From positions 1 through 64,000 of IMG/VR virus record IMGVR_UViG_3300048591_000147: a stretch of 64,000 nt of DNA, one strand, 5' to 3'. How positions within the stretch are numbered: position 1 is the stretch's first letter; the number at the start of each line of letters is the position of its first letter. Shown here piece after piece: positions 1 to 16,187 of the stretch. The position numbers and the translations under genes are program-made. The notes beneath the pieces are model-generated. The model ran no database searches and was not told the origin of the DNA. It saw nothing but the letters and a program-made list of their open reading frames with translations.

Positions 1-130
1 TTACTCCAACAGTTACTCCAACAGTTACTCCAACAGTTACTCCAACAGTTACTCCAACAGTTACTCCAACAGTTACTCCAACAGTTACTCCAACAGTTAC
101 TCCAACAGTTACTCCAACAGTTACTCCAAC
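1..130 (+). repeat. Perfect 12-nt tandem repeat (GTTACTCCAACA, about 10.8 copies) encoding VTPT
   Basis: Read directly from the sequence; in frame with ORF 168..773 and truncated by the window edge. Confidence 0.95.
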
Positions 131-773
131 TATATCGATTACGCCTACAATTACGCCTACAGAGACTGTGACACCTACAGTAACTCCAACCACTTCGTCT
201 ACGTCCAATGACATTATATTTGATATTGTCCAAACGGTTGGATTAGATTTAAGCAACGCAAACAGAACCGCAACAGTGTCAAATCCGGCATGGTGGGAAT
301 GTCTTTCATATTGTAATAAATTAGTGGATGCGACTGATAGTAATTATATTGAAATAGAATGCACAGTGGTGGATGCAGCGGCGGGTCATATCATGGTGGG
401 CATTGGCAGTGATTACACGTTGGCGTTTCCACACAACTCACCAAATTCATATATGTATTACGCGCATGGGTCTATATGGAATGGGGGTAGTTCATCGTCA
501 TATGGTAGTTCATGGTTATCCGTGGGAACTCACAACATAGGCATATTACTGAAAAATGGTAAATTGTATTTTAGGGTGGATGGGGTTTGGCAAAATAGTG
601 CTGATGTAGACTCTGAAACCGGGTTCGCATTCTCTGGTTTGACTGGTTCGTTTAACGTATTGTTTAGCGTATCTGGAGACACAGATCCAAATGCATATGG
701 TACATTGAATAATACGTCAGGTCTTCTGGTTTATTCATTACCTACTGGCGCTTCCGTCTGGGGGCAGCTATAA
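3..773 (+). CDS. 5'-partial Pro/Thr-repeat virion protein with C-terminal SPRY/ConA-like beta-sandwich
   Basis: Frame open from nt 3 through VTPT repeats into ORF 168..773; C-terminal pattern YIEIEC..IMVGIG..YMYYAHG..YG..IGILL..GKLYFRVDG resembles SPRY domains. Confidence 0.65.
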   Translation, partial: TPTVTPTVTPTVTPTVTPTVTPTVTPTVTPTVTPTVTPTVTPTISITPTITPTETVTPTVTPTTSSTSNDIIFDIVQTVGLDLSNANRTATVSNPAWWECLSYCNKLVDATDSNYIEIECTVVDAAAGHIMVGIGSDYTLAFPHNSPNSYMYYAHGSIWNGGSSSSYGSSWLSVGTHNIGILLKNGKLYFRVDGVWQNSADVDSETGFAFSGLTGSFNVLFSVSGDTDPNAYGTLNNTSGLLVYSLPTGASVWGQL

Positions 774-833: not shown

Positions 834-1370
834 ATGGCTGACAGTAAAATCTCTGATTTACCATTAAGGGATGCATTAACAGGCGCGGAACAGTTCCCGC
901 TCGATCAGGGCTTAGTGACTGTGAAAGCATCGTTGGATGATGTTAAACAGTATTGTAATACTATACTAACTTTAACTGATGGTACTTGGTCTGGGATATT
1001 CTCAGAATATGGAATTCTAGGCGAAGCAGTGGCATTCGGTGAATTAATTTATCTAAGTGCTGCTGATAGTAAATGGTATAAAGCTGATGCAACAACAGCC
1101 GCTACATCTGGTGATGTAAAAGTTGGTGTATGTGTTGTAGGTGGGGTTTTGGATGCGGTTACAACGATATTATATATTGGTAGTATACGCGCAGACGCAC
1201 TGTTCCCAACATTTACCATTTCTGGCCCAGTAATGATATCAGAAACTCCGGGTGAAATGACACAAACCGCGCCAGTCACGAGCAATTCTGTGACAAGACG
1301 AATAGGATTCGCTAGCACCGCTAATGAAGTCCTGATAAATATCAGTAACGATTATTACACGCACATATAA
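834..1370 (+). CDS. Putative virion structural/decoration protein
   Basis: MADSKISDLP start typical of phage fibre proteins; C-terminus (TAPVT..RRIGF..EVLINI) similar to C-terminus of 14905..15858. Confidence 0.5.
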   Translation: MADSKISDLPLRDALTGAEQFPLDQGLVTVKASLDDVKQYCNTILTLTDGTWSGIFSEYGILGEAVAFGELIYLSAADSKWYKADATTAATSGDVKVGVCVVGGVLDAVTTILYIGSIRADALFPTFTISGPVMISETPGEMTQTAPVTSNSVTRRIGFASTANEVLINISNDYYTHI

Positions 1371-1387
1371 CAGGATATAAATTAATA

Positions 1388-2299: not shown

Positions 2300-2300
2300 A

Positions 2301-2648
2301 ATGCCTCATTATAATGCCACACCTGATATATTAGTTGGAGAAGGCGTTCCACTAGTCACGATTAATATCGTGCCAATTTATCAGTTCCCCCTATTTAATA
2401 CTGTGCCTCCCGGTGACAAAAGGATTGCTGCTGATAATCCGGCACGAGTAATTCTGGGTAGTGCTCCAGTGTCTAGAATAATAGACATATTCGATAAAGA
2501 AACTAATGTACATGTAGCTCGCACCACATCATCCGCTATTGACGGTACTTATAGCTTTGGCCAATTACCTAACAGAGAATATTTTGTTATATGTAGAGGG
2601 ATTAATGGAGAAAATGATACAATACACACAAGAGTGGCCCCAGTATGA
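2301..2648 (+). CDS. Small beta-sandwich fibre accessory protein, paralog of 11587..11946
   Basis: Shared G.AP.SR..D.FD.E....VA.T.S..DGTY.F..L motif. Confidence 0.55.
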   Translation: MPHYNATPDILVGEGVPLVTINIVPIYQFPLFNTVPPGDKRIAADNPARVILGSAPVSRIIDIFDKETNVHVARTTSSAIDGTYSFGQLPNREYFVICRGINGENDTIHTRVAPV

Positions 2649-3992: not shown

Positions 3993-5258
3993 TCACTCAA
4001 AATTTGTGAGCACAAATTTCTTTGATTTAACATCTATGTATCGGTAATAGGGCTCGGTAAGAAACCAATACCAACGTGCTGGCATTTTAGGGTTTACCGC
4101 GTTTCCATACCCGTCAGTAACAATAAATACTGCGCCGGGATATTTCTTGAACTCTTTTAATACGCTAGTCTCTATGATGGAGAAACTTGTACCATATCCA
4201 GAAGGAAGTCTTGCGTCTTTCAAATCAATTTCTTCAACGTATGTAGAGAATCCAAAGAATCGCACATTGAATCTGTCCAATGGCACTGATTTTGCCGCGT
4301 TAAAAAACCGCTGTGTATAGTTTCTACAAGATGGTGAAGTGTCTATGTAGAATGCCACATCTATCTTTTCTGGTTTGATCTTAATAAATTCGTCATCAGT
4401 GGGCAATATAAGCGACTTGTCCAAAGTGGTGAACCGCCTATTAAGCTTCACCCATTGTTGATTCTGATGTTCTGTTTCTTTTAGTTTATTATTGACCCAT
4501 CGGTGTATAATAGTTTCCCATTTCTTCTTCTTTCTGATTTTCTTGTTCTGTAAGTACTGTGATATTTTACCAGAACAATCACCAGCATTTAATCCAGTCT
4601 CTTCACTTACGTCTTTTTGAATCTTGTTAAGAAGCTCAAGCTCTTGCACGGACATATTGTCCAGAATATCGTCTACTAGTTTGTCTGATGCGTCTGTTTG
4701 CTCCCATTGTGCATGATCATCCGCTAGACTTGGAAGTGCCTGATCCGTACTTGTCGAACCATCGGATGACTGACCATCTAGTTTATTGTTGAGCATTTCA
4801 AAATAATATTCAAAATTGTGGTTTGGTTGTAAATCGGGATCGTTTGGAAATACATTTTTTAACCAACATAATTCAGTGTTGGGATCTATTTCTTGCCTCA
4901 CAAAGTTATAGTATTTTACTAGGGATTCATTAATAGTTAGATCCATAGCGATGTTGGCAACGTGCATGGTACTCTTACTCATGCCGTTATTCACCATATA
5001 AATATATCGTGTAATATGGTTAAGCATGACATGCAGACATTCATGTGCGATATAAAATGTTTTTTGGTTTAAATCCAGAGTGTTCCAAAACTTCTCGTTC
5101 AATAATAATTTGAAATTGTTGTTCAACGGGTCGAAGCTGATAGCACAACGCTCAATCTCTTCGGTAAAGTATGGTTGACCCAGATTGAAAAACGTATGGT
5201 ACATATTGCCATACAACTGTAAATTATTTAAGATGTCTTGCTTTTCGTTGTTATCCAT
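3993..5258 (-). CDS. Metallopeptidase-like (HExxH) plus vWA domain protein (DUF2201-like)
   Basis: AHECLHVMLNH, N.A.D..IN motif, C-terminal DTSPS MIDAS-like, GYGTSF, VTDG. Confidence 0.85.
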   Translation of the reverse strand: MDNNEKQDILNNLQLYGNMYHTFFNLGQPYFTEEIERCAISFDPLNNNFKLLLNEKFWNTLDLNQKTFYIAHECLHVMLNHITRYIYMVNNGMSKSTMHVANIAMDLTINESLVKYYNFVRQEIDPNTELCWLKNVFPNDPDLQPNHNFEYYFEMLNNKLDGQSSDGSTSTDQALPSLADDHAQWEQTDASDKLVDDILDNMSVQELELLNKIQKDVSEETGLNAGDCSGKISQYLQNKKIRKKKKWETIIHRWVNNKLKETEHQNQQWVKLNRRFTTLDKSLILPTDDEFIKIKPEKIDVAFYIDTSPSCRNYTQRFFNAAKSVPLDRFNVRFFGFSTYVEEIDLKDARLPSGYGTSFSIIETSVLKEFKKYPGAVFIVTDGYGNAVNPKMPARWYWFLTEPYYRYIDVKSKKFVLTNFE

Positions 5259-5320
5259 TTATAACCTTGATTTTTAGAGATTTCTACACATACATATGAA
5301 GACGATGGAATATTTATTGA

Positions 5321-6328
5321 ATGAATAAAAACATAATGAACCAATTGGAGTTTGCGGTCAAGAACAATTATAACGTTCTGCTGATTGGTGATGCTGGAGT
5401 TGGTAAAACAGCAGTCATAAAACAAGTGTTCGAATCGATGAACTTCAGTTATATGTATTTCTCAGCAGCGACCATGGACCCTTGGGTGGATTTCGTTGGA
5501 GTTCCAAAGGAAGTAGAAGATGCTGATGGTAATAAGTATCTGGACCTAATCAGACCTAAACAGTTTGCATTTGATACGGTAGATGCCATCTTCATGGACG
5601 AGTATAATAGGGCAGCGCCAAAGGTAAGAAATTCTACCATGGAGTTGATACAGTTCAAGAGTATCAATGGAAAGAAATATAATAGGCTCAAAATGGTGTG
5701 GGCTGCTATAAATCCATACTCAGAAGATGATAACAAGTATAATGTTGAGGAACTAGACCCAGCACAATTGGATCGATTTGATTTTCATATTGAGATACCG
5801 TACAAAATCAATATGGAATATTTTACATTGAAGTATCCGACAATCGCTAGACCTAGCGCGGAGTGGTGGAACGCTCTACCAGCAGAACAAAAGAAAATAG
5901 TCTCACCAAGACGATTGGATAAAGCATTACAAACATTTACTGAAGGTGGGGACTTATCGTGGGTGATTCCTAAAGGCGTCAATGTATCGCAATTAGCTAT
6001 TAGCCTAAAGTACGGCTGTTACCAAGACAGACTGAAGGAAGTGTTTGAAAGTAAGAATGAGGCTGATATTAAAAAATTGGTCAATGATAAGAATACTCTA
6101 AGTGACTTTGTCAAACATATCGTAAAGAACAAAGATTATTGTAATTTCTTCCTACCGTTTGTGTCAGACGAGCGACTGTCGTCCTTATTGGAACATGAAC
6201 AGATAATAGATTATTTGATGCAGCCAGAAGTTGTCATCATGCGAAAAAATTTGATCCGTAGCATTGTAAACACTAAATCGGTTAAATCAAATATATTGGA
6301 TAAGTTTACTAGTCTGCTGGCACGCTAA
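5321..6328 (+). CDS. MoxR/dynein-related AAA+ ATPase
   Basis: Walker A GDAGVGKT, Walker B MDEYNRA, AAINP, LDPAQLDRF. Confidence 0.9.
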   Translation: MNKNIMNQLEFAVKNNYNVLLIGDAGVGKTAVIKQVFESMNFSYMYFSAATMDPWVDFVGVPKEVEDADGNKYLDLIRPKQFAFDTVDAIFMDEYNRAAPKVRNSTMELIQFKSINGKKYNRLKMVWAAINPYSEDDNKYNVEELDPAQLDRFDFHIEIPYKINMEYFTLKYPTIARPSAEWWNALPAEQKKIVSPRRLDKALQTFTEGGDLSWVIPKGVNVSQLAISLKYGCYQDRLKEVFESKNEADIKKLVNDKNTLSDFVKHIVKNKDYCNFFLPFVSDERLSSLLEHEQIIDYLMQPEVVIMRKNLIRSIVNTKSVKSNILDKFTSLLAR

Positions 6329-6922
6329 TTATTTTGTTATCAATTTGGCTGGTGTGCCAACGTAAGTGCCAGATTCGGTGATGTGCTTTACGACACCAGA
6401 GTTCAAACCAATAGTAACATCATCACAAATGTTTATTTTCTCTTTAACGCAGGCGTTAGTTCCAAAATATACCCGATTACCAATGTTACAGTTTCCAGAT
6501 ATTTTTGCGCCGGGTGCAGTTGTGAAGAAGTCTCCGATTCGACAGTCATGTCCTATGGTGGTCTGTAGGTTTAGATGACAGTGGTCCCCAATTACTATAT
6601 TGGTGGTTAGAATCGATCCAGCACATATTACAGAACCTTTTCCAACCTTGATAAACTCATCCAACACAATAGCTGAAGAATGTACGAAAGAAAAGAACTT
6701 TGTGGCATCTGGTAACGAATTCAATATCTTTTGGCGGTGATGTGGACTACCCACAGCTATCAACACTTCGTATTCATTAATATCTAGTGTACTCAGAGCG
6801 GCGGACGTTTCATCGGCGTATTCATCATTGACGAAGAATTTTATTTCTGCATCTATGTCACTTAATATGTGGTGATAAACTTCTCTCCCAAATCCACCAG
6901 ACCCTATAATAGCTTTCTTCAT
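6329..6922 (-). CDS. Sugar N/O-acetyltransferase, NeuD/PglD family
   Basis: N-terminal IIGSGGFGREV, hexapeptide repeats, IGHDC catalytic His, YVGTPAK. Confidence 0.92.
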   Translation of the reverse strand: MKKAIIGSGGFGREVYHHILSDIDAEIKFFVNDEYADETSAALSTLDINEYEVLIAVGSPHHRQKILNSLPDATKFFSFVHSSAIVLDEFIKVGKGSVICAGSILTTNIVIGDHCHLNLQTTIGHDCRIGDFFTTAPGAKISGNCNIGNRVYFGTNACVKEKINICDDVTIGLNSGVVKHITESGTYVGTPAKLITK

Positions 6923-6931
6923 ATCGTTTCC

Positions 6932-7816
6932 TTATAATGGTGCGTATTGGCTGTAACTTCTAACGAATGCGTCTGAGTAGGGACACACAGCCGATCCCAT
7001 ATCAATTTGTGTAATATTCTTATACTCGTGATAAAAATCATCTATTAGCTTCTTCGCCACATATGAACAAGCGTATATCAAGACCGTGTTTTCGTTTCTA
7101 TCAAATTTATCTAATAGGTTTTTTATTTCGTCTTGGACTCTATCGCTTTCTTTCCAAACGTCATTATTGTTCAGCGTTTGTACATGAGAAAATGAAAAAT
7201 ATTTACGCATATTTATACAGTAATCTGGCCCAATCACGATCACATTACGTTTCTTGAATTGGTCAAAATACTTCTGCATTTCACCAGTTATACTAAGCCG
7301 CACGAATAGGAATCCATCACAGAGCTTCATCCCATTTAAATGTGGGTATATCTGCTCACTCATATAAGGTTTTTTGTATACTTGTGAAGATATACCAATA
7401 AAATATGGGGGGACTTTCTTTATGATAGGCATAAGATAATCGTCAACATATTTCTGTCCAGATTCGCCCCAGACCCAGTTATTACAATTGTACTCAGTTG
7501 GGGGGCGTGTTATTACACTGTTACCAGTATACGCTATTCGTAGCATAGGAATCCACTCACCGTCATTATATCTGGCAACCGAGAATGGCTTATGGTCTTG
7601 TAATTGGTTTAAAAAATGTGTGTTGATATTTGCTTGTAACACATTTACATTATAATTCTCCGTTAGTGGGAACTGTAATTTTTTAAATGAGAAAATCATA
7701 TCTTGGCAATAAAACTTTGGAGCCAGCGTATAAAGTCTTTGTAGACCTTGTGCCATTTTATTTTTGAATTGTTTGGAGTCTTCTATTGTTATTGATTTAT
7801 ACTGTTCATCTATCAT
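6932..7816 (-). CDS. Putative GT-D-fold (DUF1792-like) glycosyltransferase
   Basis: FSVARYNDGEW resembles the GT-D S..RFGDGE motif; C-terminal AKKL..D..IDMGS; paralogous to the C-terminal half of 7813..9777. Confidence 0.6.
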   Translation of the reverse strand: MIDEQYKSITIEDSKQFKNKMAQGLQRLYTLAPKFYCQDMIFSFKKLQFPLTENYNVNVLQANINTHFLNQLQDHKPFSVARYNDGEWIPMLRIAYTGNSVITRPPTEYNCNNWVWGESGQKYVDDYLMPIIKKVPPYFIGISSQVYKKPYMSEQIYPHLNGMKLCDGFLFVRLSITGEMQKYFDQFKKRNVIVIGPDYCINMRKYFSFSHVQTLNNNDVWKESDRVQDEIKNLLDKFDRNENTVLIYACSYVAKKLIDDFYHEYKNITQIDMGSAVCPYSDAFVRSYSQYAPL

Positions 7817-9777
7817 AGTGGGGTAAATTTATGCCAAGGTCTTATATTTATGCCACAATATGCGCATAGTGCGGCACCTATATCGATCTGGGTGATCATT
7901 TTATACTCATGGTATAAAGCGTCGATCATTGTTTTGGCAACATACGAGCAGCAGTATAATACCACAGGACTGTCTATTTTATTTACATTGTTCTTAAGTT
8001 CATTATAGATTCTATCATGCTCATCCCATACGTTGTTGTTGGTAACAATATGAGTGAATTTAAAATATTTTGTCATCTTGCTCAGGTATTGAGGTCCAAC
8101 TATTATTATATTTCTTTTCTTGAATTGATCGAAATACTTAATCAGTTCACCATTGATACTTAACTTAGCCCACAACCCACCATCAACCAATTGTAAGTCC
8201 TTCAGATATGGCGTTATGAAACTCATCATATAAGGTTTTTGTAATACTTGGGACGCTATACCAATATAATATTTTGGCTTGCTCTTTATCACTGGTAACA
8301 TCCGCTCTTCGGCATATTTTTGCCCGGATTCATTTAATGTCCAATCTTTAAAATTGTATGGTGGGTGATTGGGTGGAACGCTGCTTGAAATGCCGGAATA
8401 TGATATTTTTAACATTGGTGACCACTCACCGTCATTATATCTGGCAAATGAAAATGGTATATTATTCTCTAAGTTATTGAGAAATAATTGATTAACATCA
8501 TTCTCCAGTGTTGTTATATTTGATGGTGTTATTAAAGGAAATTTGACCGTGCAATCATTGATAGTATACACACTATCTTCCGTGAAGAACTCAGGACATA
8601 CCAAGCGATATGCTTGTAAACCATCCTTTATCTGTTTCTTAATTTGATATGCTTTAGGATCTGCTCTTGATTCTAGATAATCAAATATTTTTTGTTGCTG
8701 CACGCCATAATCGAAACGCATAAATGAATGCGATTGAATGTTGGTAGACATTTGATGTAGCAGTTTACGATCAGCTTCTAACTTTTTAATTATATTGCAT
8801 GCTCTATCGACCTCATTATTCTTTATGATGAACATCATATCAGTAGTGTATTTGAACTGATTGTTACTGTTATGGATATCAGTTGTGATTAGCACTACAC
8901 CCTGCAATGCTGCTTCTATACCAAGAGGCCAGCCGTTGAATGCATCACCAGTCTCGGCGTTTATTAGAATGTCAACATGCTTATTATAGAATTCATCGAG
9001 TTCTACTTGTGCCTTCGGACTATAATTTGTTATATTGGCATCTGGGATACAATTACCAATGGATATAAATCTCACATTTAATGATGGAAAGGTCTTTTTA
9101 AATGTCGAGGCTATTTGACGATAACTATCACTTCCCTTACTGGCATTGTGCCCCATGTTAGAGAAGCAAACCGTCAGAGTCGATCTATTTAACTTTTTTT
9201 GTTGTGGCTTTTCATCTTTGTTTAAACATGTACTACCATAGCATGAGATATAGTTAGTGAAGCCATAATTACTCAACCATTTATCAGTCTTTTCTTGTGT
9301 GGAGATTATGTTGGCTTTTTTGTTTATTTTCAATATGTCTTCTTTGCCACCTAGCCCACCACCGGGATACAGATGAATGAACTGTTTTTCGTGCGGTACT
9401 TTAGTATATTCTTTGTTAAATTTTATGTAGTTTGACAAGAAAATGTGATATATTGTCTTATATGAATCTACGTTGAATTCGGTGCCAGTGGTGAAGAGAT
9501 AACTGAATGAACTTAGCCCATTGAATTTAGTACCATCTACCATTGTATTATACTTGTTCAAATGATTATATTGTGGATCAAATATTAGAATGTTGAAACT
9601 AGACAAATTGAAATACTTGGACATCTGTTCATAATCAACGTCATATGATATGTTGGCATAGGACTGTATCTTATTGACTAATATATCACAGTTACCACGA
9701 TCTATGAATGCTTTAGTCTCAGCAATGCGCCACTTTGCGTATTTTGATGGAAACAAAATATCTACTAATAGGTTCAT
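7813..9777 (-). CDS. Two-domain glycosyltransferase (GT-B/GT4-like N-terminus plus GT-D-like C-terminus)
   Basis: SKG.D, DILIN, GWPLGIEAALQGVVLITTD GT4-like signature; FSFARYNDGEW in C-terminal domain. Confidence 0.75.
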   Translation of the reverse strand: MNLLVDILFPSKYAKWRIAETKAFIDRGNCDILVNKIQSYANISYDVDYEQMSKYFNLSSFNILIFDPQYNHLNKYNTMVDGTKFNGLSSFSYLFTTGTEFNVDSYKTIYHIFLSNYIKFNKEYTKVPHEKQFIHLYPGGGLGGKEDILKINKKANIISTQEKTDKWLSNYGFTNYISCYGSTCLNKDEKPQQKKLNRSTLTVCFSNMGHNASKGSDSYRQIASTFKKTFPSLNVRFISIGNCIPDANITNYSPKAQVELDEFYNKHVDILINAETGDAFNGWPLGIEAALQGVVLITTDIHNSNNQFKYTTDMMFIIKNNEVDRACNIIKKLEADRKLLHQMSTNIQSHSFMRFDYGVQQQKIFDYLESRADPKAYQIKKQIKDGLQAYRLVCPEFFTEDSVYTINDCTVKFPLITPSNITTLENDVNQLFLNNLENNIPFSFARYNDGEWSPMLKISYSGISSSVPPNHPPYNFKDWTLNESGQKYAEERMLPVIKSKPKYYIGIASQVLQKPYMMSFITPYLKDLQLVDGGLWAKLSINGELIKYFDQFKKRNIIIVGPQYLSKMTKYFKFTHIVTNNNVWDEHDRIYNELKNNVNKIDSPVVLYCCSYVAKTMIDALYHEYKMITQIDIGAALCAYCGINIRPWHKFTPL

Positions 9778-10790
9778 GATTTAAATTTTTTGATGGCCGC
9801 ACAGATATAATTAATCTCAAAATCAGTTACATTACAGTGTAATGGAAAATTGATTATTCTGTCATATAAGTATGTGGCGTTATCATGGCCGTCAGCTATA
9901 GGTTTGTAATACTTGTTCGCCTCTATACCTATATCCCTAAATGCGTTTGGTGAGATGGGATTCTCGAATACTACTGGTAGATTACCATAGAAATTTCTGT
10001 CATTGAAATTGAATATTTTGACGTCTTTGTTATCGGTCAAGACCTCACAGTATTTTTTCTGCGCATTAAGATGCTTGTCAATGTCATAATTATCTATATG
10101 TTGTAAGATGAATGCGGCAGATACTTCGGATATCTTGAAGTTTGACGATTTTGGTTTGTGTATTCGGTTATAGTGAAAACCAAATCCACATATAGCCTGT
10201 AGTACTTCATACTCATCGGTGTCAACAACTAAAAATCCACCTTCTCCAAATCCAAATGTTTTAGTGTGATGTAGCGAACCAAATGATGCGTCACCCAATA
10301 AGCAAATGTTGACACCATCTTTATTACATGTTAGAAATGAAGATGCATTGTCATAGATTATGATTTTATCTTTGAATGTATTAATGTCAAAGTCCACTAC
10401 AGTACCAAATAGATTGGTTATTATGATACCATCGGCATCACCAACATCTTCTGGTCTAAGCGTGTATGTATTCAAATCTATATCGACAAGCCTAGTATTA
10501 GTTTCGTTTACTACACAACTTGGAAATGTAAACGATGGACTAACCCATTTCAATTTTCGTTTGTGTTTTGTTTCATAGTGGAATATTAGAGCGTGTAGCG
10601 CAGTGGTCCCATTCGATACGCACAATACCCTCTTGTTAGAAGGGCAATTAATCATTCTTTCTATTTGCTTTTCTAATAGGTCTTTGACTGGACCGTTATT
10701 TGTGAATTGGTTGTGGTCAGTGGATATCTTTAAATATTTCTGTACCAACTCGGAATCGATTGTTTTATGTTGAATATAGCTAATTTTCAT
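9774..10790 (-). CDS. DegT/DnrJ/EryC1/StrS PLP-dependent sugar aminotransferase
   Basis: FTNNGP, SNGTTALHAL, PSFTF, DNASS, GSLHHTK (PLP lysine), GEGG. Confidence 0.92.
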   Translation of the reverse strand: MKISYIQHKTIDSELVQKYLKISTDHNQFTNNGPVKDLLEKQIERMINCPSNKRVLCVSNGTTALHALIFHYETKHKRKLKWVSPSFTFPSCVVNETNTRLVDIDLNTYTLRPEDVGDADGIIITNLFGTVVDFDINTFKDKIIIYDNASSFLTCNKDGVNICLLGDASFGSLHHTKTFGFGEGGFLVVDTDEYEVLQAICGFGFHYNRIHKPKSSNFKISEVSAAFILQHIDNYDIDKHLNAQKKYCEVLTDNKDVKIFNFNDRNFYGNLPVVFENPISPNAFRDIGIEANKYYKPIADGHDNATYLYDRIINFPLHCNVTDFEINYICAAIKKFKS

Positions 10791-10801
10791 TTACGTTCTC
10801 G

Positions 10802-11587
10802 TCAATTTGGTGGAATATCCATTGTGTCTGCGTCAAACAATGTTTTATATGGTGGATCTTCTCTTGTAACGTCAGTCACTTTTTCCCAAATATCGTCTTG
10901 AGTTCGTATAGTATCCAATCGCAGTTTGATGGATTTTATGAAATTCTGTTTGATGTTGACTGGTGGGCTTAAATAAAACTGCACTCTGAAATTTAATGAT
11001 GTAACTATGACCCGCTTATCAGCGAGTTTTGGGTAATTTTTGTTAAAATCTACATTAACTAGCTCTACGCTAGTGATTTTCGTCAAGTCGTGAAAGTCGT
11101 CAGAAGTTTGAATTTGTAATACAGGATCAAAGATCATTAATATCTGTTCTAATATCTGTAAATGTTGGTCTTCATTACTACAATACATTGAAAGCTCAAA
11201 TAATCCGTCATATGGTATTGGTTGAGCTTGATAGACTACTTTTATGTCATCTGGTAACGATCCGCCCGCTGGTAGCACGCTATGGCGCATGAAAGTTCCG
11301 ACACCTTTTCTTCTAGATGGTACTTGTTCCATTCCGGCAAAATCAGCCGCGAACATGGGCAATCGTATAGGTTTATTTTGTGTATTCTCAGAAAGAATTG
11401 CATCCACTATTCGACTAGAATTACCATACCGGATAGGCACATACATTAGATTCTTAGTAGAATTGAAATTGTTTTTTCCAACAGATACTTGCAGCCCGGA
11501 AAATATGGCCATGAATTGTATTATATAGCTTCTGATTTGTTCGTCATAGAAATAGGTATCTAAGTCTTTCTTGAAATCATTATCCAT
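10802..11587 (-). CDS. Tail sheath stabiliser/completion protein, T4 gp15-like
   Basis: YFYDEQIRSYIIQF..IFS, VPIRYG, LPM, P.PYD..FELSMY, LQILEQIL..FDP pattern. Confidence 0.75.
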   Translation of the reverse strand: MDNDFKKDLDTYFYDEQIRSYIIQFMAIFSGLQVSVGKNNFNSTKNLMYVPIRYGNSSRIVDAILSENTQNKPIRLPMFAADFAGMEQVPSRRKGVGTFMRHSVLPAGGSLPDDIKVVYQAQPIPYDGLFELSMYCSNEDQHLQILEQILMIFDPVLQIQTSDDFHDLTKITSVELVNVDFNKNYPKLADKRVIVTSLNFRVQFYLSPPVNIKQNFIKSIKLRLDTIRTQDDIWEKVTDVTREDPPYKTLFDADTMDIPPN

Positions 11588-11946
11588 TAGACTGGGTGAA
11601 CTCCGGGTATAATAACATCCCTTTCATTACTAGCAATAACGCCTCTAATAATTACATCATATCCTTGTGTACGGGCAGACAAATTGGTAAATTCATATGT
11701 ACCATCACCCGCTGATGTAGTTGAAGCGACTAGAACCTTAAACTCTCTGTCAAAGACATCCACAACCCGAGATGCTGGCGCCATTCCAACTAGTACTAAA
11801 CCAGTGGGAGAGTCGCCAGCAACTCTTAACTCGCCGGGAGGTACATATTCATTCACAATAAATGAGGGTGTGAATGTTAATATATTAGATAGCGGGGCTA
11901 CAGGAAATAATACAGTATCTAAATACGCATCAATAATAAGAGCCAT
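11587..11946 (-). CDS. Small beta-sandwich fibre accessory protein, paralog of 2301..2648
   Basis: Motif similarity as above. Confidence 0.55.
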   Translation of the reverse strand: MALIIDAYLDTVLFPVAPLSNILTFTPSFIVNEYVPPGELRVAGDSPTGLVLVGMAPASRVVDVFDREFKVLVASTTSAGDGTYEFTNLSARTQGYDVIIRGVIASNERDVIIPGVHPV

Positions 11947-11949
11947 AGG

Positions 11950-12843
11950 TTACTCCCAGATTAACCCGAAATAATCGCGCCATGACATATTATTTTCAAG
12001 CACAATAAATGTTTTTGGTGTAACACCAAGAGTAGTGCAGGTAAATGTTGTTCCTAGTGTTAAACCATCAGTTGATGACAATGATACTACGTTAGATAAC
12101 GGCTGTATTAGTGGCATTGCACAATAATGTCGTGCCACCTGATAATCACCCGGAACACCAGCATGAATAGTCCCTGACGTACCGAGAAGACCGGGCATGA
12201 ATGCATATGCGTTACATCCAAAAATCCCAACATCAGTAGATGACCAAGTGTATCCAGTGGTAAATTCATATGTTGTGACTGAGGGACACACAGTGACAGT
12301 AGCTACATAAACGACAACGCCCTGTGCGGTAGGTGTTCCAGAACTGTCTACTGTACGATGTATTACAAGCCCAGAAACAGCTCCAGATGTAAAAACTACA
12401 TTACACTTTAATGCAAACCATACACACCCTTCTACCATACACGCATAAGTTTGTTTGGCCAGAACTGTAGAATCAAGAACGAATTGAGAAGAATAACATT
12501 GAACACGCGCCACGAATATACCTGTGATGGTGCCGCTTCCATTAGAACCAGTACCCACAGTTATCCATATTGATGGATATGTATGAACAACACCATTACC
12601 ATATTCTATTTTAACATAAATTGGTGCAGTGCCGTGTAATGAATCATTTAAATATCTTATTTCATATCCAGCAGCGGTATCAGTCGATCCTGATTTGTTT
12701 ACAGACGCCCAGTTTATTTGACCAGTGTCTGCGGATTTAATGAATCCTACCGCTGTTAAAGCATTTGAAAACGCCAACCCCCATGCTCTGAAGTTAGCAG
12801 TTGCTGCATGTGAAATTAATGTTGTATAATTATTTGTTGCCAT
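11950..12843 (-). CDS. Putative tail/fibre-associated protein, paralog of 1388..2299
   Basis: Motif similarity as above. Confidence 0.6.
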   Translation of the reverse strand: MATNNYTTLISHAATANFRAWGLAFSNALTAVGFIKSADTGQINWASVNKSGSTDTAAGYEIRYLNDSLHGTAPIYVKIEYGNGVVHTYPSIWITVGTGSNGSGTITGIFVARVQCYSSQFVLDSTVLAKQTYACMVEGCVWFALKCNVVFTSGAVSGLVIHRTVDSSGTPTAQGVVVYVATVTVCPSVTTYEFTTGYTWSSTDVGIFGCNAYAFMPGLLGTSGTIHAGVPGDYQVARHYCAMPLIQPLSNVVSLSSTDGLTLGTTFTCTTLGVTPKTFIVLENNMSWRDYFGLIWE

Positions 12844-12883
12844 TTTTATAATACCTTTAGTAGTTCGTTACATTATTTATACG

Positions 12884-13894
12884 TTAGGCGCACAAATTAC
12901 CGCCTACGTCATCGCCGCTTGGTGGTGTATATCCAGTGACTATATTTCCACCCACATCATCACCATTCGGTGGCGTGTAAGTGCAACCTACTACATATGA
13001 CGGGCTAGGAGTCACGGTTGGCGTAACTGTTGGTGTTACCGACTCTGTAGGAGTAATAGTTGGAGTGATTGAAGGCGTCACCGTTGGCGTCACGGTTGGT
13101 GTAACAGTCGGCATTACTGACTCTGTAGGAGTAATAGTTGGTGTTACAGTCGGTGTAATTGTAGGCGTCACAGTCGGTGTTACAGACTCTGTCGGTGTAA
13201 TGGTTGGTGTAACAGTCGGTGTTACAGTTGGTGTAATCGTAGGCGTAATTGTAGGCGTTACCGTAGGCGTCACAGTTGGTGTAATTGTAGGCGTCACAGT
13301 TGGTGTAATTGTAGGCGTCACAGTTGGTGTTACCGTTGGAGTGACCGAAGCGGTTGGTGTAACAGTCGGTGTAACACTAATCGTTGGTGTAACAGTCGGT
13401 GTAACTGACATCGTTGGTGTCACTGTTGGTGTTGGTGTTGGAGTTCTAGTTGTTGTAGGTGTAATGGTCACCGTGGGTGTTATTGTAGGTGTTACTGTAG
13501 GCGTCACAGTCGGTGTAATGGTTGGAGTAATAGTAGGTGTGACTGTTGTTGTAGGCGTCACAGTCGGTGTTGGAGTTGGAGTTGGCGTGACGTTTATTAC
13601 ACCATCGTTTAACGGTTTTATGAACAATACATTACAAAAGCCAGAAACGCTTTCTGAAAAATATATGTTAATCGACGAATCAGTTGCTTCGACATAATCT
13701 GGATATATTAATTTGTTATCAGTGTCAAAAACTTGAATTAATAGATTATCGGTATTGAATGTGTGTGAAATGTTCCAAACGCTAGTAGCTACAACTTGTG
13801 TGTTGGTCGCAACAGCAGGATTACTAGAAACGTCGACTGTTTCTAGTTCATTTGTCTTTGTGTTTATATAAATTTTCTTAAAACTAGAATTCAT
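12884..13894 (-). CDS. Pro/Thr-repeat (mucin-like) putative virion protein
   Basis: About 190 aa of xTPT repeats between an N-terminal beta domain and a YTPPxGDDVGG C-terminus. Confidence 0.75.
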
Positions 13895-13972
13895 GGGTCA
13901 TTCACCACTCACTAGTTCTAGTCCACAATATGATTTCATTTTATCACTCTTTAAGATATTTATTAATACCAA

Positions 13973-14908
13973 TTAAATTGGCGTTACAGATGGGGTAACT
14001 GTTGGAGTCACAGATAACGTAGGAGTAACTGTTTCCGTAGGTGTAATCGTTGGGGTCACAGATATTGTAGGGGTTATCGTAGGCGTCACAGATATTGTTG
14101 GTGTGACTGTTGGAGTGATAGTTGGAGTAGGGGTTATCGTCACTGGTACACAAGTAATTAATGGAGATCCAGCCTCCATTTCTATATCTGAATCATCTTC
14201 CATTGTTATCGGGCTGCAATTCTCCATCAACATCGCCTTAATCACATCTGTCGTAGTTGGTGTAATTGTAGGTGTAATAGTTGGCGTAACGGTGACAGTT
14301 GGGGTCACAGTTTCTGTAGGAGTAATGGTTGGTGTTAAACTAATAGTTGGTGTAATAGTTGGCGTGACGGTGACAGTTGGAGTAATAGTCGGAGTAACCG
14401 TAGGTGTCGGTGTAGGTGTTCTAGTTGTCGTAGGTGTCGGTGTAGGTGTTCTAGTTGTCGTTACAGTTGGTGTGACAGTCGCAGTTGTAGTTATTGTAGG
14501 AGTAATAGTCACAGTCGGCGTAATAGTTGGTGTTACGGTCGGCGTAATTGTAGGTGTAATGGTTGGAGTTATTGTAGGTGTAATGGTTGGTGTCACCGTT
14601 GGAGTAGGCGAATTTGTCACCTGTACCAAGGTTACATTAGGAATTGAAAAATGTATTGCTACCGTCCCAGTAACTATATCAGAAAAGTTGAATACTAAGT
14701 GGCTACCAGTGTCTATTACACTATTGGGTATGATGATTTCATTATTAGCGATAACTACGAATGAATAATCAGAAGAGTGTTTCTTGATGGTAACTTGGGC
14801 GGCATTGAATTCATAGATTACATCATTTATGTCGTCTGGTAGCGGACCGTTGAATAAAACGGTATTCCCTGTTTCTATGTCTAATGTGTATCGATACAAG
14901 ATATTCAT
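13973..14908 (-). CDS. Pro/Thr-repeat (mucin-like) putative virion protein
   Basis: Two xTPT tracts; N-terminal domain related to that of 12884..13894. Confidence 0.75.
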   Translation of the reverse strand: MNILYRYTLDIETGNTVLFNGPLPDDINDVIYEFNAAQVTIKKHSSDYSFVVIANNEIIIPNSVIDTGSHLVFNFSDIVTGTVAIHFSIPNVTLVQVTNSPTPTVTPTITPTITPTITPTITPTVTPTITPTVTITPTITTTATVTPTVTTTRTPTPTPTTTRTPTPTPTVTPTITPTVTVTPTITPTISLTPTITPTETVTPTVTVTPTITPTITPTTTDVIKAMLMENCSPITMEDDSDIEMEAGSPLITCVPVTITPTPTITPTVTPTISVTPTITPTISVTPTITPTETVTPTLSVTPTVTPSVTPI

Positions 14909-15858
14909 CTGTTTATCAATACTTGGTCAGTGATGTCAACGAATATGCTATTACTGTCTACTATAAAACCTATTCTCTGCATCGAGTACTCATTTGGTAC
15001 GGTAGTGGTTATTTCACCATTTTTCCCAACGAAAACTGTGGTCATTGGCGGTTCACTCCAATTCCAAGAGTTCGGATTTGATATCTTACCAAATTTTATA
15101 AATCTTACTACTTCACCGTTTGAATATGGTGCCAGTGAAACGCCTACACATTGTCGTGTGATATCCGTGCTGGATGCTACACCTAATTTGTTATAGTCCT
15201 TATAACATACACAATAATTTGCTGGGATCGTTTCTATAGCCTTAGCAGTGATTGCATGGCCCTCGGCTTTAGTGGATTGATCTAAAGCGTTCTGGTAGCT
15301 AATAAATGATTCAGTAGTTAAGAACGCACCACTACCAAATTTGTCTAATCTTTTAACAGGTTTTCCAGCATCATCAAATAAGATCTGGCCAGAGTAATTA
15401 CTTTGATTCAGTCCAACTGTAGAGCCGACAGAATATGCATTAACAATCGAACCGCTTTGTAAGTATCCTACAAATAAACGAACCTTATCTACCCAGCGAT
15501 TTCCAACCCTAACCTGCATGACTTTAGTCTTTAAATTAAAGAAGTGCTGGTCAGCGACTGGCGAAGCTGGTATTGTTGACCCGTATGTTGGTGCTACTGT
15601 CGTGTAACCAAAAGTTCTAACTCCAGTAGGAATGTCAATATCTATATAAAGATAATAGTTGTTGCTGCTTGGGAATGACCCAGTCCATGCGGTTAGGTTG
15701 GTTTCTGATTCTACTAATAGGTAATTATGGTTACCGTGGGCAAAAGTTCCGATGAATGGGGTAGAATCACAAATCAAACGAACATTATTACCAACTTTTG
15801 ATAAAAAAGATGGACTTGTTTGGACTTGAACTAGACCTTGGCGAAAAGATAATAACAT
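14905..15858 (-). CDS. Putative virion structural protein
   Basis: First gene of the minus-strand module; C-terminus similar to 834..1370. Confidence 0.55.
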   Translation of the reverse strand: MLLSFRQGLVQVQTSPSFLSKVGNNVRLICDSTPFIGTFAHGNHNYLLVESETNLTAWTGSFPSSNNYYLYIDIDIPTGVRTFGYTTVAPTYGSTIPASPVADQHFFNLKTKVMQVRVGNRWVDKVRLFVGYLQSGSIVNAYSVGSTVGLNQSNYSGQILFDDAGKPVKRLDKFGSGAFLTTESFISYQNALDQSTKAEGHAITAKAIETIPANYCVCYKDYNKLGVASSTDITRQCVGVSLAPYSNGEVVRFIKFGKISNPNSWNWSEPPMTTVFVGKNGEITTTVPNEYSMQRIGFIVDSNSIFVDITDQVLINR

Positions 15859-15887: not shown

Positions 15888-16187
15888 TTAATCATTTAAA
15901 ACCGAATTAACCTGTTCATTTGATGTAACTGGTACACAGATATAATTATCTAACTCAAATTCGTTAAGCATTCTCTTATGATTGAAAATGTCAACGAAGG
16001 TTATCTGCATCACTCCAGTGGATTGTGAAAGATATTCTGATTTTTTAGAGTCGTAAAAGACTATGTCATCTTTTACATCATACTTATTAGTGCATGCGGT
16101 AACTGTACCAATAGTGAAGTCTACGGATGGTGAGTCTTTACAACCATATAAGCTAATTGCTAGAATTAATAAAACTATAAACCTCAT
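15888..16187 (-). CDS. Putative lipoprotein
   Basis: Signal peptide with LYGC lipobox. Confidence 0.6.
   Translation of the reverse strand: MRFIVLLILAISLYGCKDSPSVDFTIGTVTACTNKYDVKDDIVFYDSKKSEYLSQSTGVMQITFVDIFNHKRMLNEFELDNYICVPVTSNEQVNSVLND

What the first reader, a model, noticed from the sequence alone, without database searches (positions are those of the whole stretch)
6329..15858. Candidate virion O-glycosylation system: amino-sugar/GT operon in line with mucin-like Thr/Pro tail proteins
Seen: one contiguous minus-strand run with small or overlapping gaps: structural gene, two xTPT-repeat proteins, two fibre-like genes, gp15-like, DegT aminotransferase, GT4+GT-D protein, GT-D protein, NeuD/PglD acetyltransferase. 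A third xTPT protein lies at 3..773. Established: DegT plus PglD-type enzymes make N-acetylated amino-deoxysugar nucleotides; GT-D (DUF1792) enzymes extend glycans on streptococcal serine-rich repeat adhesins; Pro/Thr linkers are classic O-glycosylation acceptors. Inference: the phage glycosylates its own appendages (a glycan coat for protease resistance, receptor mimicry or adhesion) rather than DNA or LPS. No dehydratase or priming transferase is visible in this window.
Basis: partly seen in the sequence, partly recalled or inferred. Interest (0 to 1): 0.75.

Follow-up and report, generated by a model that had tools for sequence, protein, structure and literature searches.

The report
Jumbo-phage sugar module beside Thr/Pro-repeat proteins
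An uncultured 315-kb phage carries genes for making an N-acetylated amino-sugar and three sugar-transferring domains, placed in the same tail-gene operon region as proteins made of dozens of Thr-Pro-Thr repeats, so it probably sugar-coats its own appendages, but this is not proven.

Summary
Window 6329-15858 is one minus-strand gene run (gaps from -4 to +78 nt). In transcription order it encodes p317, two proteins with 36 and 44 xTPT units, p297, p119, T4 gp15, a DegT aminotransferase, a 654-aa GT4-like+GT-D protein, a 294-aa GT-D paralogue and a NeuD/PglB/VioB acetyltransferase.

GT-D shows only at profile level. The GT4-like half shows by fold (AF2 pLDDT 96, Z 24). The closest solved relatives are Mimivirus L136 (viosamine aminotransferase, E 9e-40) and VioB (E 9e-30), so the likely product is NDP-N-acetylviosamine. 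The genome has no dehydratase, nucleotidyltransferase or priming transferase.

The phage is a relative of Xanthomonas jumbo phage XacN1, whose virions contain Schiff-stained glycoproteins.

Support for virion O-glycosylation is circumstantial:
- a late-type promoter motif lies upstream of p297, followed by an operon with no further intergenic motif;
- the transferases are soluble;
- Thr/Pro-repeat proteins occur in 7 of 8 related records that carry the transferase and in 0 of 7 that lack it;
- in another relative, an unrelated GT9 gene overlaps the stop codon of a PT-stalk gene.

In other lineages the module lies away from structural genes. The acceptor is inferred, not shown. Verdict: a real and interesting new variant of virus-encoded virion glycosylation.

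The parts
6329..6922 (-). Sugar N-acetyltransferase of the NeuD/PglB/VioB family (197 aa). It is the last gene of the operon.
   Evidence: TIGR03570 scores 170.8 bits against a cut-off of 160.8. PglD_N and Hexapep also hit. The best solved relative is VioB 7txp, E 9e-30, with the active-site His aligned.
6932..7816 (-). Stand-alone GT-D-type glycosyltransferase (294 aa). It is a paralogue of the C-terminal half of the 654-aa protein.
   Evidence: It is 47% identical to residues 378-654 of the neighbour. A family of 659 relatives exists. The family profile hits GalT1/DUF1792 4phr at E 8e-8. Of 78 members, 19 hit PF08759 and 33 hit PF22882. The R82, D85-G86-E87, D272 and G274 columns are conserved. 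There is no direct Pfam hit.
7813..9777 (-). Two-domain glycosyltransferase (654 aa). Residues 1-374 form a GT-B/GT4-like domain and residues ~403-654 a GT-D domain.
   Evidence: The AF2 model has pLDDT 96.2. The N-domain aligns at Z 20-24 to GT4-type enzymes (6eji, BshA, PimA, PglA). K214, G215 and E288 are invariant among 40 homologues. The N-domain family has more than 150 members, either stand-alone or fused to GT-D, GT2 or methyltransferase domains.
9774..10790 (-). PLP-dependent sugar aminotransferase (DegT family, L136-like; 338 aa).
   Evidence: PF01041 scores 78.7 bits. The best solved relative is Mimivirus L136 7mfo, E 9e-40, full length, with the HHTK Schiff-base lysine motif aligned. 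The best NCBIfam hit is DesI, below its cut-off.
10802..11587 (-). T4 gp15-type tail sheath stabiliser/completion protein (261 aa).
   Evidence: PF16724 scores 137 bits and phrog_227 also hits. It is 50% identical to XacN1 ORF368.
11587..11946 (-). p119, function unknown. It has a paralogue at 2301-2648(+).
   Evidence: There are no family hits, only faint beta-sandwich hints at E~0.08. The paralogue was found by BLAST.
11950..12843 (-). p297, from a phage-only family of unknown function. It has a paralogue at 1388-2299(+) and is the first gene after the late-type promoter motif.
   Evidence: The Atlas gives Uroviricota-only clusters with no Pfam family. The paralogue was found. TATAAATA lies at 12874-12881(-), 31 nt upstream of the start codon.
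12874..12881 (-). T4-late-type promoter motif TATAAATA upstream of p297. It is the likely start of the p297-p119-gp15-DegT-GT654-GTD294-AcT transcript.
   Evidence: Genome-wide, 19 of 35 TATAAATA sites lie 20-37 nt upstream of a same-strand start codon, against 13% for composition-matched 8-mers. The 7-mer core ATAAATA also lies upstream of p99, p317 and PT336, and inside GT654 29 nt before the GTD294 start. No such motif precedes gp15, DegT, GT654 or AcT.
12884..13894 (-). PT336: a ~95-aa N-terminal domain followed by 44 xTPT units. Candidate glycan acceptor.
   Evidence: The N-domain hits phrog_21918. The homologue in the nearest relative has a shorter repeat tract, 186-217 aa in total.
13973..14908 (-). 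PT311: a ~95-aa N-terminal domain followed by 36 xTPT units, interrupted by an acidic Met/Glu/Asp-rich segment. Candidate glycan acceptor.
   Evidence: The acidic segment is conserved in the L002 homologue.
14905..15858 (-). p317: a conserved module that in relatives and in a paralogue carries a PT stalk and variable distal domains.
   Evidence: Its C-terminal part hits phrog_4368, as does the N-terminus of the PT-plus-beta-propeller protein at 159892-161634. Homologues are extended by PT tracts (L005, P0280, P0282), a carbohydrate-binding module (P0286, PF02839) or other distal sequence.
1..773 (+). C-terminal part of PT678, a 678-aa xTPT protein whose gene spans the ends of the record (it starts at genome position 313566).
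   Evidence: The 127-nt 'terminal repeat' is a perfect 12-bp tandem repeat inside this gene. Homologues lie near the sugar module in L002 and L005.

Best explanation
This is a phage-encoded glycosylation module, probably expressed late, that decorates virion appendage proteins.

Proposed mechanism:
1. The host supplies NDP-4-keto-6-deoxy-D-glucose, the RmlA/RmlB-type intermediate. The phage has no nucleotidyltransferase or 4,6-dehydratase of its own.
2. The L136-like aminotransferase converts it to NDP-viosamine.
3. The VioB-like acetyltransferase makes NDP-4-acetamido-4,6-dideoxyglucose (N-acetylviosamine).
4. Three soluble transferase domains (one GT-B/GT4-like and two GT-D) then build a short O-glycan in the cytoplasm. 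They would use this sugar plus host NDP-sugars.
5. The most likely acceptors are the Thr residues of the very long xTPT tracts of PT336, PT311 and the three other PT proteins of the genome. The result would be mucin-like stalks or bristles.

What is shown: gene identities, the operon layout, the absence of the upstream pathway genes, and co-occurrence with PT proteins.

What is inferred: the sugar's identity, late timing, protein as the target, and Thr in the repeats as the acceptor.
For: Enzyme identities:
- Searches identify the aminotransferase and acetyltransferase. Their nearest solved relatives are the viosamine pair, L136 and VioB, and the catalytic Lys and His align.
- establish GT-D through the family profile and the conserved DxE columns.
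- establish the GT-B/GT4-like fold, Z 24.

Dependence on the host and a cytoplasmic route:
- The 315-kb genome has no Epimerase/dehydratase, NTP_transferase, Bac_transf or GT2 family genes.
- The 654-aa model is compact and confidently folded (pLDDT 96, pTM 0.90), consistent with a soluble enzyme; no transmembrane prediction was run.
- The PT proteins show no obvious signal peptide by eye.

Operon layout:
- A T4-late-type motif lies 31 nt before p297. No further motif precedes gp15, DegT, GT654 or AcT, and the genes abut or overlap. One copy does lie inside GT654, 29 nt before the GTD294 start.

Association with PT proteins:
- The nearest relative keeps PT311-PT336-gp15-DegT-GT654-GTD294-AcT.
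- In the complete 307-kb relative the module lies between two PT proteins.
- Three fragments that have the module but no nearby PT gene carry PT(S)-repeat proteins elsewhere.
- The [TS]P[TS]x x3 pattern occurs in 6 of 8 records with the GT4-like gene (7 of 8 by composition) and in 0 of 7 gp15 relatives without it.
- In relative L083 a GT9-family gene overlaps the stop codon of a p317-PT gene, next to gp15 and the sheath gene.

Precedent:
- XacN1 is the nearest cultured relative by gp15. Its virions show Schiff-positive bands, it encodes its own GTs (PMC5852040), and it has xTPT linkers in ORF369, ORF370 and ORF372 beside gp15.
- Mimivirus uses L136 plus N-L142 to make Vio4NAc for its glycosylated fibrils. 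Those genes are clustered with GTs, a pyruvyl transferase and a methyltransferase (PMC9614988). Relatives of this phage add a pyruvyl transferase and a methyltransferase to the module.
Against: - There is no direct evidence of any glycoprotein, transcript or enzyme activity for this phage.
- The position in line with tail genes is seen only here and in the nearest relative. In L005/L008, L073, L074 and L075 the module lies among non-structural genes such as ClpP, helicase, PARP and anti-defence genes.
- The co-occurrence count is small and not phylogenetically independent. The Pfam scans used to look for other GTs in the non-carrier relatives missed at least one of XacN1's two annotated GTs (only a sub-threshold 17.6-bit GT2 hit), so they are insensitive.
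- XacN1 has xTPT linkers without this module.
- Thr/Pro linkers also serve as plain extended spacers.
- The complex prediction of GT654 with a PT peptide gave no answer.
- The sugar's stereochemistry rests on best hits only; the NCBIfam equivalog cut-offs are not reached.
Confidence: 0.45

Rival explanations
1. The module glycosylates virion proteins, but not the Thr/Pro repeats. The targets would be capsid, sheath or decoration proteins, as in mycobacteriophages. The PT tracts would be plain extended spacers that happen to be a trait of this lineage.
For: The evidence on enzymes, promoter and operon is the same as for the main explanation. In several relatives the module is not near any PT gene. 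XacN1 has xTPT linkers with different GTs. From my own knowledge, Freeman et al. 2023 (cited in PMC12691614) found glycans on capsid and tail-tube subunits.
Against: PT proteins co-occur with the module at genome level. A GT9 gene is translationally coupled to a PT-stalk gene in L083. PT311 and PT336 are almost nothing but an anchor domain plus a 200-aa Thr/Pro tract, which makes little sense as a spacer with nothing at its end.
Confidence: 0.17
2. The module remodels a host envelope glycan during infection, such as O-antigen, capsule or S-layer glycan. The effect could be to block superinfection or to prevent progeny being trapped on cell debris.
For: DegT/VioB-type enzymes and GT4 enzymes are typical of O-antigen and capsule loci; the best solved relatives include VioB, PglD, WbpE and WaaG. 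In many relatives the module sits among non-structural auxiliary genes.
Against: The genome has no priming phosphoglycosyl transferase and no GT2. No membrane-associated component is evident in the module itself. Flippase and polymerase genes were not searched for. The module shares an operon with gp15 behind a late-type promoter motif. Known GT-D enzymes act on protein-bound glycans in the cytoplasm (my own knowledge; PMC5063993 abstract).
Confidence: 0.18
3. The transferases hypermodify phage DNA with a glycan on hydroxymethylated bases.
For: Phage GTs that build di- and tri-saccharides on 5hmC exist (bioRxiv 10.1101/2023.12.21.572611). T4 alpha- and beta-glucosyltransferases share the GT-B fold and appear in the fold list at Z 19.1 and 16.6.
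Against: The only thymidylate-synthase-family gene (162705-163538) scores 283 bits and keeps the uracil-specifying Asn, so it is not a dCMP hydroxymethylase. No Tet/JBP gene was found, although that search had no positive control. The N-domain is closer to GT4 sugar, protein and lipid transferases (Z 24) than to DNA transferases. Timing is probably late. No amino-sugar DNA modification is known to me.
Confidence: 0.06
4. The module makes a glycan or glycoconjugate that is not attached to protein, for example a lipid or small-molecule conjugate, or a free polysaccharide that coats particles non-covalently.
For: One relative's cluster adds acyl-carrier, AMP-binding, LuxC/LuxE and SDR genes. That suggests acylated sugars or glycolipids.
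Against: Those genes are absent here. This genome has only three transferase domains and no export or polymerisation genes.
Confidence: 0.08

Closest known systems
Mimivirus fibril glycosylation cluster (R135-L143: L136 aminotransferase, N-L142 acetyltransferase, R141 dehydratase, five GTs, L143 pyruvyl transferase, R132 methyltransferase)
   Same: The aminotransferase here is closer to L136 than to any other solved enzyme (E 9e-40, full length). It is paired with a PglB/VioB-type acetyltransferase, like N-L142. The genes are clustered with several GTs and lie next to genes for virion appendages. Relatives of this phage add pyruvyl transferase and methyltransferase genes. The GT-D-like family also has Nucleocytoviricota clusters.
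   Different: This phage has no 4,6-dehydratase, so the precursor must come from the host. The GTs are a GT4-like/GT-D set. The candidate acceptors are Thr/Pro-repeat proteins rather than a GMC oxidoreductase. The host is a bacterium. Homology between the GTs of the two systems was not tested.
Serine-rich-repeat adhesin glycosylation of streptococci (GtfA/B, Gtf3, dGT1 with its DUF1792 GT-D domain)
   Same: Soluble cytoplasmic GT-B plus GT-D transferases are encoded beside a highly repetitive hydroxy-amino-acid-rich acceptor. The family profile hits GalT1/DUF1792 4phr at E 8e-8 with the DxE motif aligned. GtfA, Gtf3 and SdgB appear in the fold list at Z 17.7-18.7.
   Different: The repeats are Thr/Pro, not Ser-rich. 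There is no GtfA/GtfB pair and no accessory Sec system. Generic GT4 enzymes match better (Z 24) than the adhesin enzymes. An amino-sugar pathway is present. This system works like it but is not a member.
Virion glycosylation of mycobacteriophages (Freeman et al. 2023, cited in PMC12691614) and the Schiff-positive virion proteins of jumbo phage XacN1 (PMC5852040)
   Same: Phage-encoded GTs modify structural proteins. XacN1 is the nearest cultured relative by gp15 (50% identity). It has xTPT linkers in the proteins encoded next to gp15.
   Different: XacN1 has no homologue of the GT-D family or of the 654-aa protein, and its glycoprotein bands were not identified. From my own knowledge, the mycobacteriophage acceptors are capsid and tail-tube subunits and no amino-sugar pathway is involved.
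O-glycosylated Pro/Thr linkers of bacterial and fungal glycoside hydrolases
   Same: They are extended (Pro-Thr)n tracts whose Thr residues carry O-glycans that protect against proteolysis (my own knowledge).
   Different: Those linkers are short and are modified by host systems after export. Here the tracts have 36-44 units, in proteins without signal peptides, and lie next to dedicated phage enzymes.

Membership tests
GT-D glycosyltransferases (DUF1792, PF08759; related PF22882 GT-D-like) | Match to the Pfam model above its gathering score | tested here: not met
   The 294-aa and 654-aa proteins have no hit even at E<=10. A six-frame scan of the genome with PF08759 finds nothing. Of 78 homologues, 19 hit PF08759 and 33 hit PF22882.
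GT-D glycosyltransferases (DUF1792, PF08759; related PF22882 GT-D-like) | Profile-level homology to the solved founding member, GalT1/dGT1 DUF1792 | tested here: met
   The profile of 78 homologues hits 4phr at E 8e-8 and 5v4a at E 2.6e-5. Atlas neighbours are GT-D and GT-D-like clusters.
GT-D glycosyltransferases (DUF1792, PF08759; related PF22882 GT-D-like) | Metal-binding DxE motif | tested here: met
   G86 and E87 are invariant, and R82 and D85 nearly invariant (>=90%), across 78 sequences. The motif aligns with the RFGDGE segment of 4phr.
GT-D glycosyltransferases (DUF1792, PF08759; related PF22882 GT-D-like) | GT-D fold shown by structure comparison | tested here: inconclusive
   The stand-alone model was poor (pLDDT 48). 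The C-domain of the good model (residues 403-654) is an alpha/beta fold, but the fold searches were dominated by the N-domain.
GT-B fold, GT4-like retaining glycosyltransferases | Two-Rossmann GT-B fold close to GT4 enzymes | tested here: met
   Residues 1-374 align at Z 20-24, over 292-324 aligned residues, to 6eji, BshA, PimA, PglA and HepE. Foldseek probability is 1.00.
GT-B fold, GT4-like retaining glycosyltransferases | Match to Glycos_transf_1 (PF00534) above its cut-off | tested here: not met
   E 0.11, 12.4 bits against a cut-off of 26.4. A few homologues carry PF00534 or PF13692.
GT-B fold, GT4-like retaining glycosyltransferases | Donor-binding Lys/Arg and Glu of the C-terminal domain (EX7E-type motif) | tested here: inconclusive
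   K214, G215, E288 and D300 are invariant in 40 homologues. They were not aligned residue by residue to a solved GT4 enzyme.
DegT/DnrJ/EryC1 sugar aminotransferases, L136/DesI-like C-4 type | Family match and PLP Schiff-base lysine | tested here: met
   PF01041 scores 78.7 bits against 19.8. The HHTK motif aligns with that of L136.
DegT/DnrJ/EryC1 sugar aminotransferases, L136/DesI-like C-4 type | C-4 amination of NDP-4-keto-6-deoxyglucose to viosamine | not testable with these tools
   This rests only on best hits: L136 at E 9e-40, and DesI as the top NCBIfam hit but far below its equivalog cut-off.
NeuD/PglB/VioB sugar N-acetyltransferases | Family model above its cut-off, and the catalytic His | tested here: met
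   TIGR03570 scores 170.8 bits against 160.8. The alignment to VioB 7txp keeps the His of the IGHD segment.
T4 gp15 tail sheath stabiliser | Pfam T4-gp15_tss above its cut-off | tested here: met
   137 bits against 25; phrog_227 at E 1.9e-36.
Mimivirus-type autonomous Vio4NAc pathway | Virus-encoded NDP-glucose 4,6-dehydratase (R141-like) | tested here: not met
   The whole genome has no PF01370-family gene; the control rang in 14 of 14 genomes. There is also no nucleotidyltransferase.
Und-P-linked surface polysaccharide pathway | Priming phosphoglycosyl transferase | tested here: not met
   No PF02397 (Bac_transf) gene in the genome. PF00953 was not searched.
DNA glycan hypermodification clusters | An enzyme that makes 5-hydroxymethyl pyrimidine (dCMP hydroxymethylase or Tet/JBP) | tested here: not met
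   There is a single ThyA-like gene with Asn at the base-specifying position. No PF12851 hit, but the control genomes did not ring either.

The most novel reading that the evidence does not exclude
XacN1-like jumbo phages carry mucin-like appendages: anchor domains bearing 100-250-residue xTPT stalks that are densely O-glycosylated in the cytoplasm by phage-encoded soluble GT4-like and GT-D transferases. The glycan would contain N-acetylviosamine, made by a pathway whose aminotransferase is closest among solved structures to the one Mimivirus uses for its fibrils. Bacterial and eukaryotic giant viruses would then share a virion-coating strategy, and possibly the genes for it. The repeat tracts are perfect at the DNA level, break assemblies, and differ in length between close relatives. 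They would therefore give rapidly tunable glycan-brush lengths.
Probability: 0.3. Interest if true: 0.82.

Novelty: new variant of a known kind. Interest (0 to 1): 0.62.

Why it matters
Protein glycosylation of bacteriophage particles has been shown for very few phages. The acceptor rules and the enzymes are hardly known. This locus gives a concrete, testable system of four enzymes and two small acceptor proteins, all clonable, in a lineage whose cultured member XacN1 already shows unexplained glycoprotein bands.

If confirmed, it would have four consequences:
- It would add a cytoplasmic O-glycosylation route for Thr/Pro repeats.
- It would assign a function to a large unannotated phage and giant-virus GT-D-like family (659 hits) and to a GT4-like family (more than 150 hits).
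- It would link phage and Mimivirus glycan machinery.
- It would bear on phage stability, adsorption and immune recognition.

There is also a practical point. The perfect 12-bp repeats cause false 'direct terminal repeat' calls in at least two IMG/VR genomes.

Tried and rejected
- Megablast of the region against cultured phages found no match. A tblastn search with the 654-aa protein also found none.
- Direct Pfam, PHROG and NCBIfam scans of the two GT proteins gave nothing. phmmer against PDB gave only noise.
- The first AF2 model of the 294-aa protein, built from 5 sequences, was unusable (pLDDT 48). I did not search with it.
- The strict TPTx x4 DNA pattern missed degenerate repeats. I replaced it with [TS]P[TS]x x3 and with composition scans.
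- The complex prediction of GT654 with a 55-aa PT peptide gave no answer and is not evidence either way.
- Sequencing runs: four wastewater 'RNA-Seq' runs hold about half of the words. They are probably DNA and give only short contigs, so they carry no expression information.
- A lead that p317 is a head-cement protein (Atlas score 0.79) got no Pfam support, and I dropped it.
- No homology was found between this region's non-gp15 proteins and the XacN1 gp15 neighbourhood.
- The listing of cluster members returned no names for GT-D relatives.
- The Freeman 2023 paper is not held.
- The long antisense ORFs at 12981-13697 and 14103-14768 (Gly-Val repeats) were rejected as mirror images of the repeats.

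Full report
**What the window is**

The window is the first 64 kb of a 314,956-bp IMG/VR virus record. By gp15, the nearest cultured relatives are:
- Xanthomonas jumbo phage XacN1, 50% identity;
- Xoo-sp13, 46%;
- two Stenotrophomonas phages, 42%;
- a Ralstonia jumbo phage, 45%.

Near-identical DNA occurs in wastewater runs. The record's 127-nt 'direct terminal repeat' is a perfect 12-bp tandem repeat (TPTV codons) inside a gene. It therefore marks an assembly closure, not a physical end. A related 'complete' genome, G005, shows the same thing.

**The observation**

Spacing ranges from a 4-nt overlap to a 78-nt gap. PT336 (12884-13894) has 44 xTPT units. PT311 (13973-14908) has 36 units. The third xTPT protein at 3..773 is the tail of a 678-aa gene that crosses the record junction. 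Two more xTPT proteins lie at 159892-161634 and 265585-267411. The first of these has a DUF5122 beta-propeller at its tip.

**The enzymes**

- gp15, DegT and the acetyltransferase pass curated cut-offs.
- The aminotransferase matches Mimivirus L136, the viosamine aminotransferase, at E 9e-40 over its full length. The next solved enzyme, QdtB, reaches only 1e-9. The PLP-lysine motif is aligned.
- The acetyltransferase matches VioB best (E 9e-30), then WeeI, PglD, PglB and PerB. The catalytic His is kept.
- The 294-aa protein is 47% identical to the C-terminal half of the 654-aa protein. Neither hits Pfam. An exhaustive profile search found 659 relatives. Of 78 aligned relatives, 19 hit PF08759 (GT-D) and 33 hit PF22882 (GT-D-like). 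Their profile hits the founding GT-D structure 4phr at E 8e-8, with the DxE motif aligned. Atlas neighbours agree and include clusters from phages and from Nucleocytoviricota.
- With a 100-sequence alignment, AF2 gave a pLDDT 96 model of the 654-aa protein. Residues 1-374 form a GT-B fold closest to GT4 enzymes, Z 20-24.
- That N-domain defines a family of more than 150 metagenomic proteins. Members stand alone or are fused to GT-D, GT2 or methyltransferase domains, often on 200-700-kb contigs.

The GT-D and GT4 assignments rest on profile and fold, not on direct family membership.

**What is missing**

The whole genome lacks the following:
- an SDR epimerase/dehydratase;
- a sugar nucleotidyltransferase;
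- a Bac_transf priming enzyme;
- any GT2;
- any further copy of the GT-D or GT4-like families.

The pathway therefore has to start from a host NDP-4-keto-6-deoxyhexose. Nothing points to an undecaprenyl-phosphate-linked route.

**Expression layout**

TATAAATA, the T4 late-promoter consensus, occurs 35 times in the genome. Nineteen of these sites lie 20-37 nt upstream of a same-strand start codon, against 13% for composition-matched 8-mers. On the minus strand of the region, the 7-mer core ATAAATA precedes p99, p317, PT336 and p297; only the p297 copy is the full 8-mer. It also occurs inside GT654, 29 nt before the GTD294 start. No such motif precedes gp15, DegT, GT654 or AcT, whose genes abut or overlap. 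The sugar genes are thus most simply read as the distal part of a p297-p119-gp15 transcript. That this promoter class is 'late' is inferred from T4, not shown.

**Relatives**

- L002, the nearest relative (72-90% protein identity), keeps p99, p317, PT311, PT336, gp15, DegT, GT654, GTD294 and AcT in order. Its repeat tracts are shorter.
- L005/L008, the complete 306,759-bp relative, has pyruvyl transferase, GT-D-like, DegT, GT654, ATP-grasp and methyltransferase genes. They lie between a PT678 homologue and a p317 homologue that itself ends in a PT/PS tract. Its gp15 sits elsewhere, again beside a PT gene.
- G001, G002 and G003 are three fragments with the module but no PT gene within 10 kb. 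Each carries large PT(S)-repeat proteins elsewhere on the contig.
- Across 15 records, the [TS]P[TS]x x3 pattern is present in 6 of 8 that carry the GT4-like gene (7 of 8 by composition). It is present in 0 of 7 gp15 relatives that lack the gene, including a complete 363-kb genome. These counts are small and clade-structured.
- Other lineages embed the GT4-like gene in varied sugar islands, mostly in non-structural surroundings. The added genes include GT2s, CmcI-type methyltransferases, PhyH, and acyl-carrier with LuxC/LuxE.
- p317 homologues carry variable C-terminal extensions. Among the closer ones (43% identity), two of three carry PT tracts. The more distant ones carry a carbohydrate-binding module or other distal sequence.
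- In L083, a p317-PT gene is overlapped at its stop codon by a GT9-family gene (55 bits against a cut-off of 22), just upstream of gp15 and the sheath gene. This is an independent pairing of a PT-stalk gene with an unrelated transferase.

**Precedents**

XacN1 virions show at least two Schiff-stained bands, and the phage encodes two GTs and a carbamoyl transferase (PMC5852040). I find xTPT linkers of 3-4 units in XacN1 ORF369, ORF370 and ORF372, directly upstream of its gp15, and in ORF350. XacN1 has no GT-D homologue and no GT654 homologue.

Mimivirus makes UDP-Vio4NAc with L136 and N-L142 for its glycosylated fibrils. Those genes are clustered with five GTs, a pyruvyl transferase, a methyltransferase and the fibril protein (PMC9614988). 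Natural capsid glycosylation of mycobacteriophages is cited in PMC12691614.

**Rivals**

- DNA hypermodification (bioRxiv 10.1101/2023.12.21.572611) is unlikely. The only thymidylate-synthase-family gene is ThyA-like with Asn at the base-specifying position, and no Tet/JBP gene was found.
- Host envelope remodelling cannot be excluded. It lacks any membrane-linked component in the module and does not explain the operon position.
- A protein target other than the PT tracts remains a real possibility.

**Verdict**

The finding is real, and the biochemical reading is supported. The appendage-glycosylation reading is the best available explanation at roughly even odds. It is a new variant of virus-encoded virion glycosylation rather than a new kind of system.

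Noticed in passing
window 1-130 and genome 314830-314956: The record's 'direct terminal repeat' (127 nt) is a perfect 12-bp tandem repeat inside the PT678 gene. The ends are an assembly artefact, and the true copy number of the repeat is unknown. The related 'complete' genome G005 also begins and ends inside a perfect TPTV repeat.
   Followed up: yes
window 834-2648 (+) versus 11587-12843 (-): There are two inverted paralogous cassettes. Cassette A is PT678, p178, p303 (1388-2299) and p115 (2301-2648). Cassette B is PT311, PT336, p297 and p119. p303 and p297 are 38% identical; p115 and p119 are 49% identical. Together the cassettes bracket the sugar module.
   Followed up: partly
window 15888-16187 (-): p99 begins with a signal-peptide-like segment ending in a Cys, which resembles a lipobox. 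It is conserved next to p317 in all close relatives. It could be a lipoprotein, for example a spanin or exclusion component.
   Followed up: no
genome 159300-161634 (+), outside the window: A p317 paralogue appears split into two overlapping ORFs. The second continues into an xTPT tract and a DUF5122 beta-propeller. This could be a frameshift or two separate genes.
   Followed up: partly
genome 76266-76343 (+), outside the window: ARAGORN calls a tRNA with anticodon CUA, which would be amber-suppressor-like, among 34 tRNA genes. Nine tRNAs lie in the window, at 20016-48411. The ORFs of the finding are intact under code 11.
   Followed up: no
window 14200-14300 (within PT311) and L002 6609-7472, L004 4558-5019: An acidic Met/Glu/Asp-rich segment with repeated 'MED'-type motifs interrupts the xTPT blocks. 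It is conserved in relatives, even in a different PT protein. Its function is unknown; it could be a docking or metal-binding element.
   Followed up: no
window 12981-13697 (+) and 14103-14768 (+): Long antisense ORFs encode Gly-Val repeats. They are mirror images of the xTPT tracts and should not be annotated as genes.
   Followed up: yes
window 3993-6328: A convergent pair lies beside the module and is conserved there in relatives: a DUF2201_N putative metallopeptidase (421 aa) and a MoxR-like AAA ATPase (335 aa). In L004/L005 the ATPase homologue is 876 aa and carries an intein.
   Followed up: partly
L083 10001-12282: A GT9-family (heptosyltransferase-type) gene overlaps the stop codon of a p317-PT-distal-domain gene. 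It lies next to a Laminin_G_3 plus beta-propeller protein, gp15 and the tail sheath gene. From my own knowledge, GT9 relatives include cytoplasmic protein heptosyltransferases of autotransporter adhesins.
   Followed up: partly
L072 1-12007; L075 17800-20500: Sugar islands of other jumbo-phage lineages add acyl-carrier, AMP-binding, LuxC/LuxE and SDR genes, which suggests acylated sugars. One island lies beside anti-defence genes (Tad3, Acb2/Tad1-like) and a PARP/WGR pair.
   Followed up: no
window 7845-7851 (-): A copy of the promoter-like motif ATAAATAT lies inside the 3' end of the GT654 gene, 29 nt before the GTD294 start. It may be an internal promoter for the last two genes.
   Followed up: no
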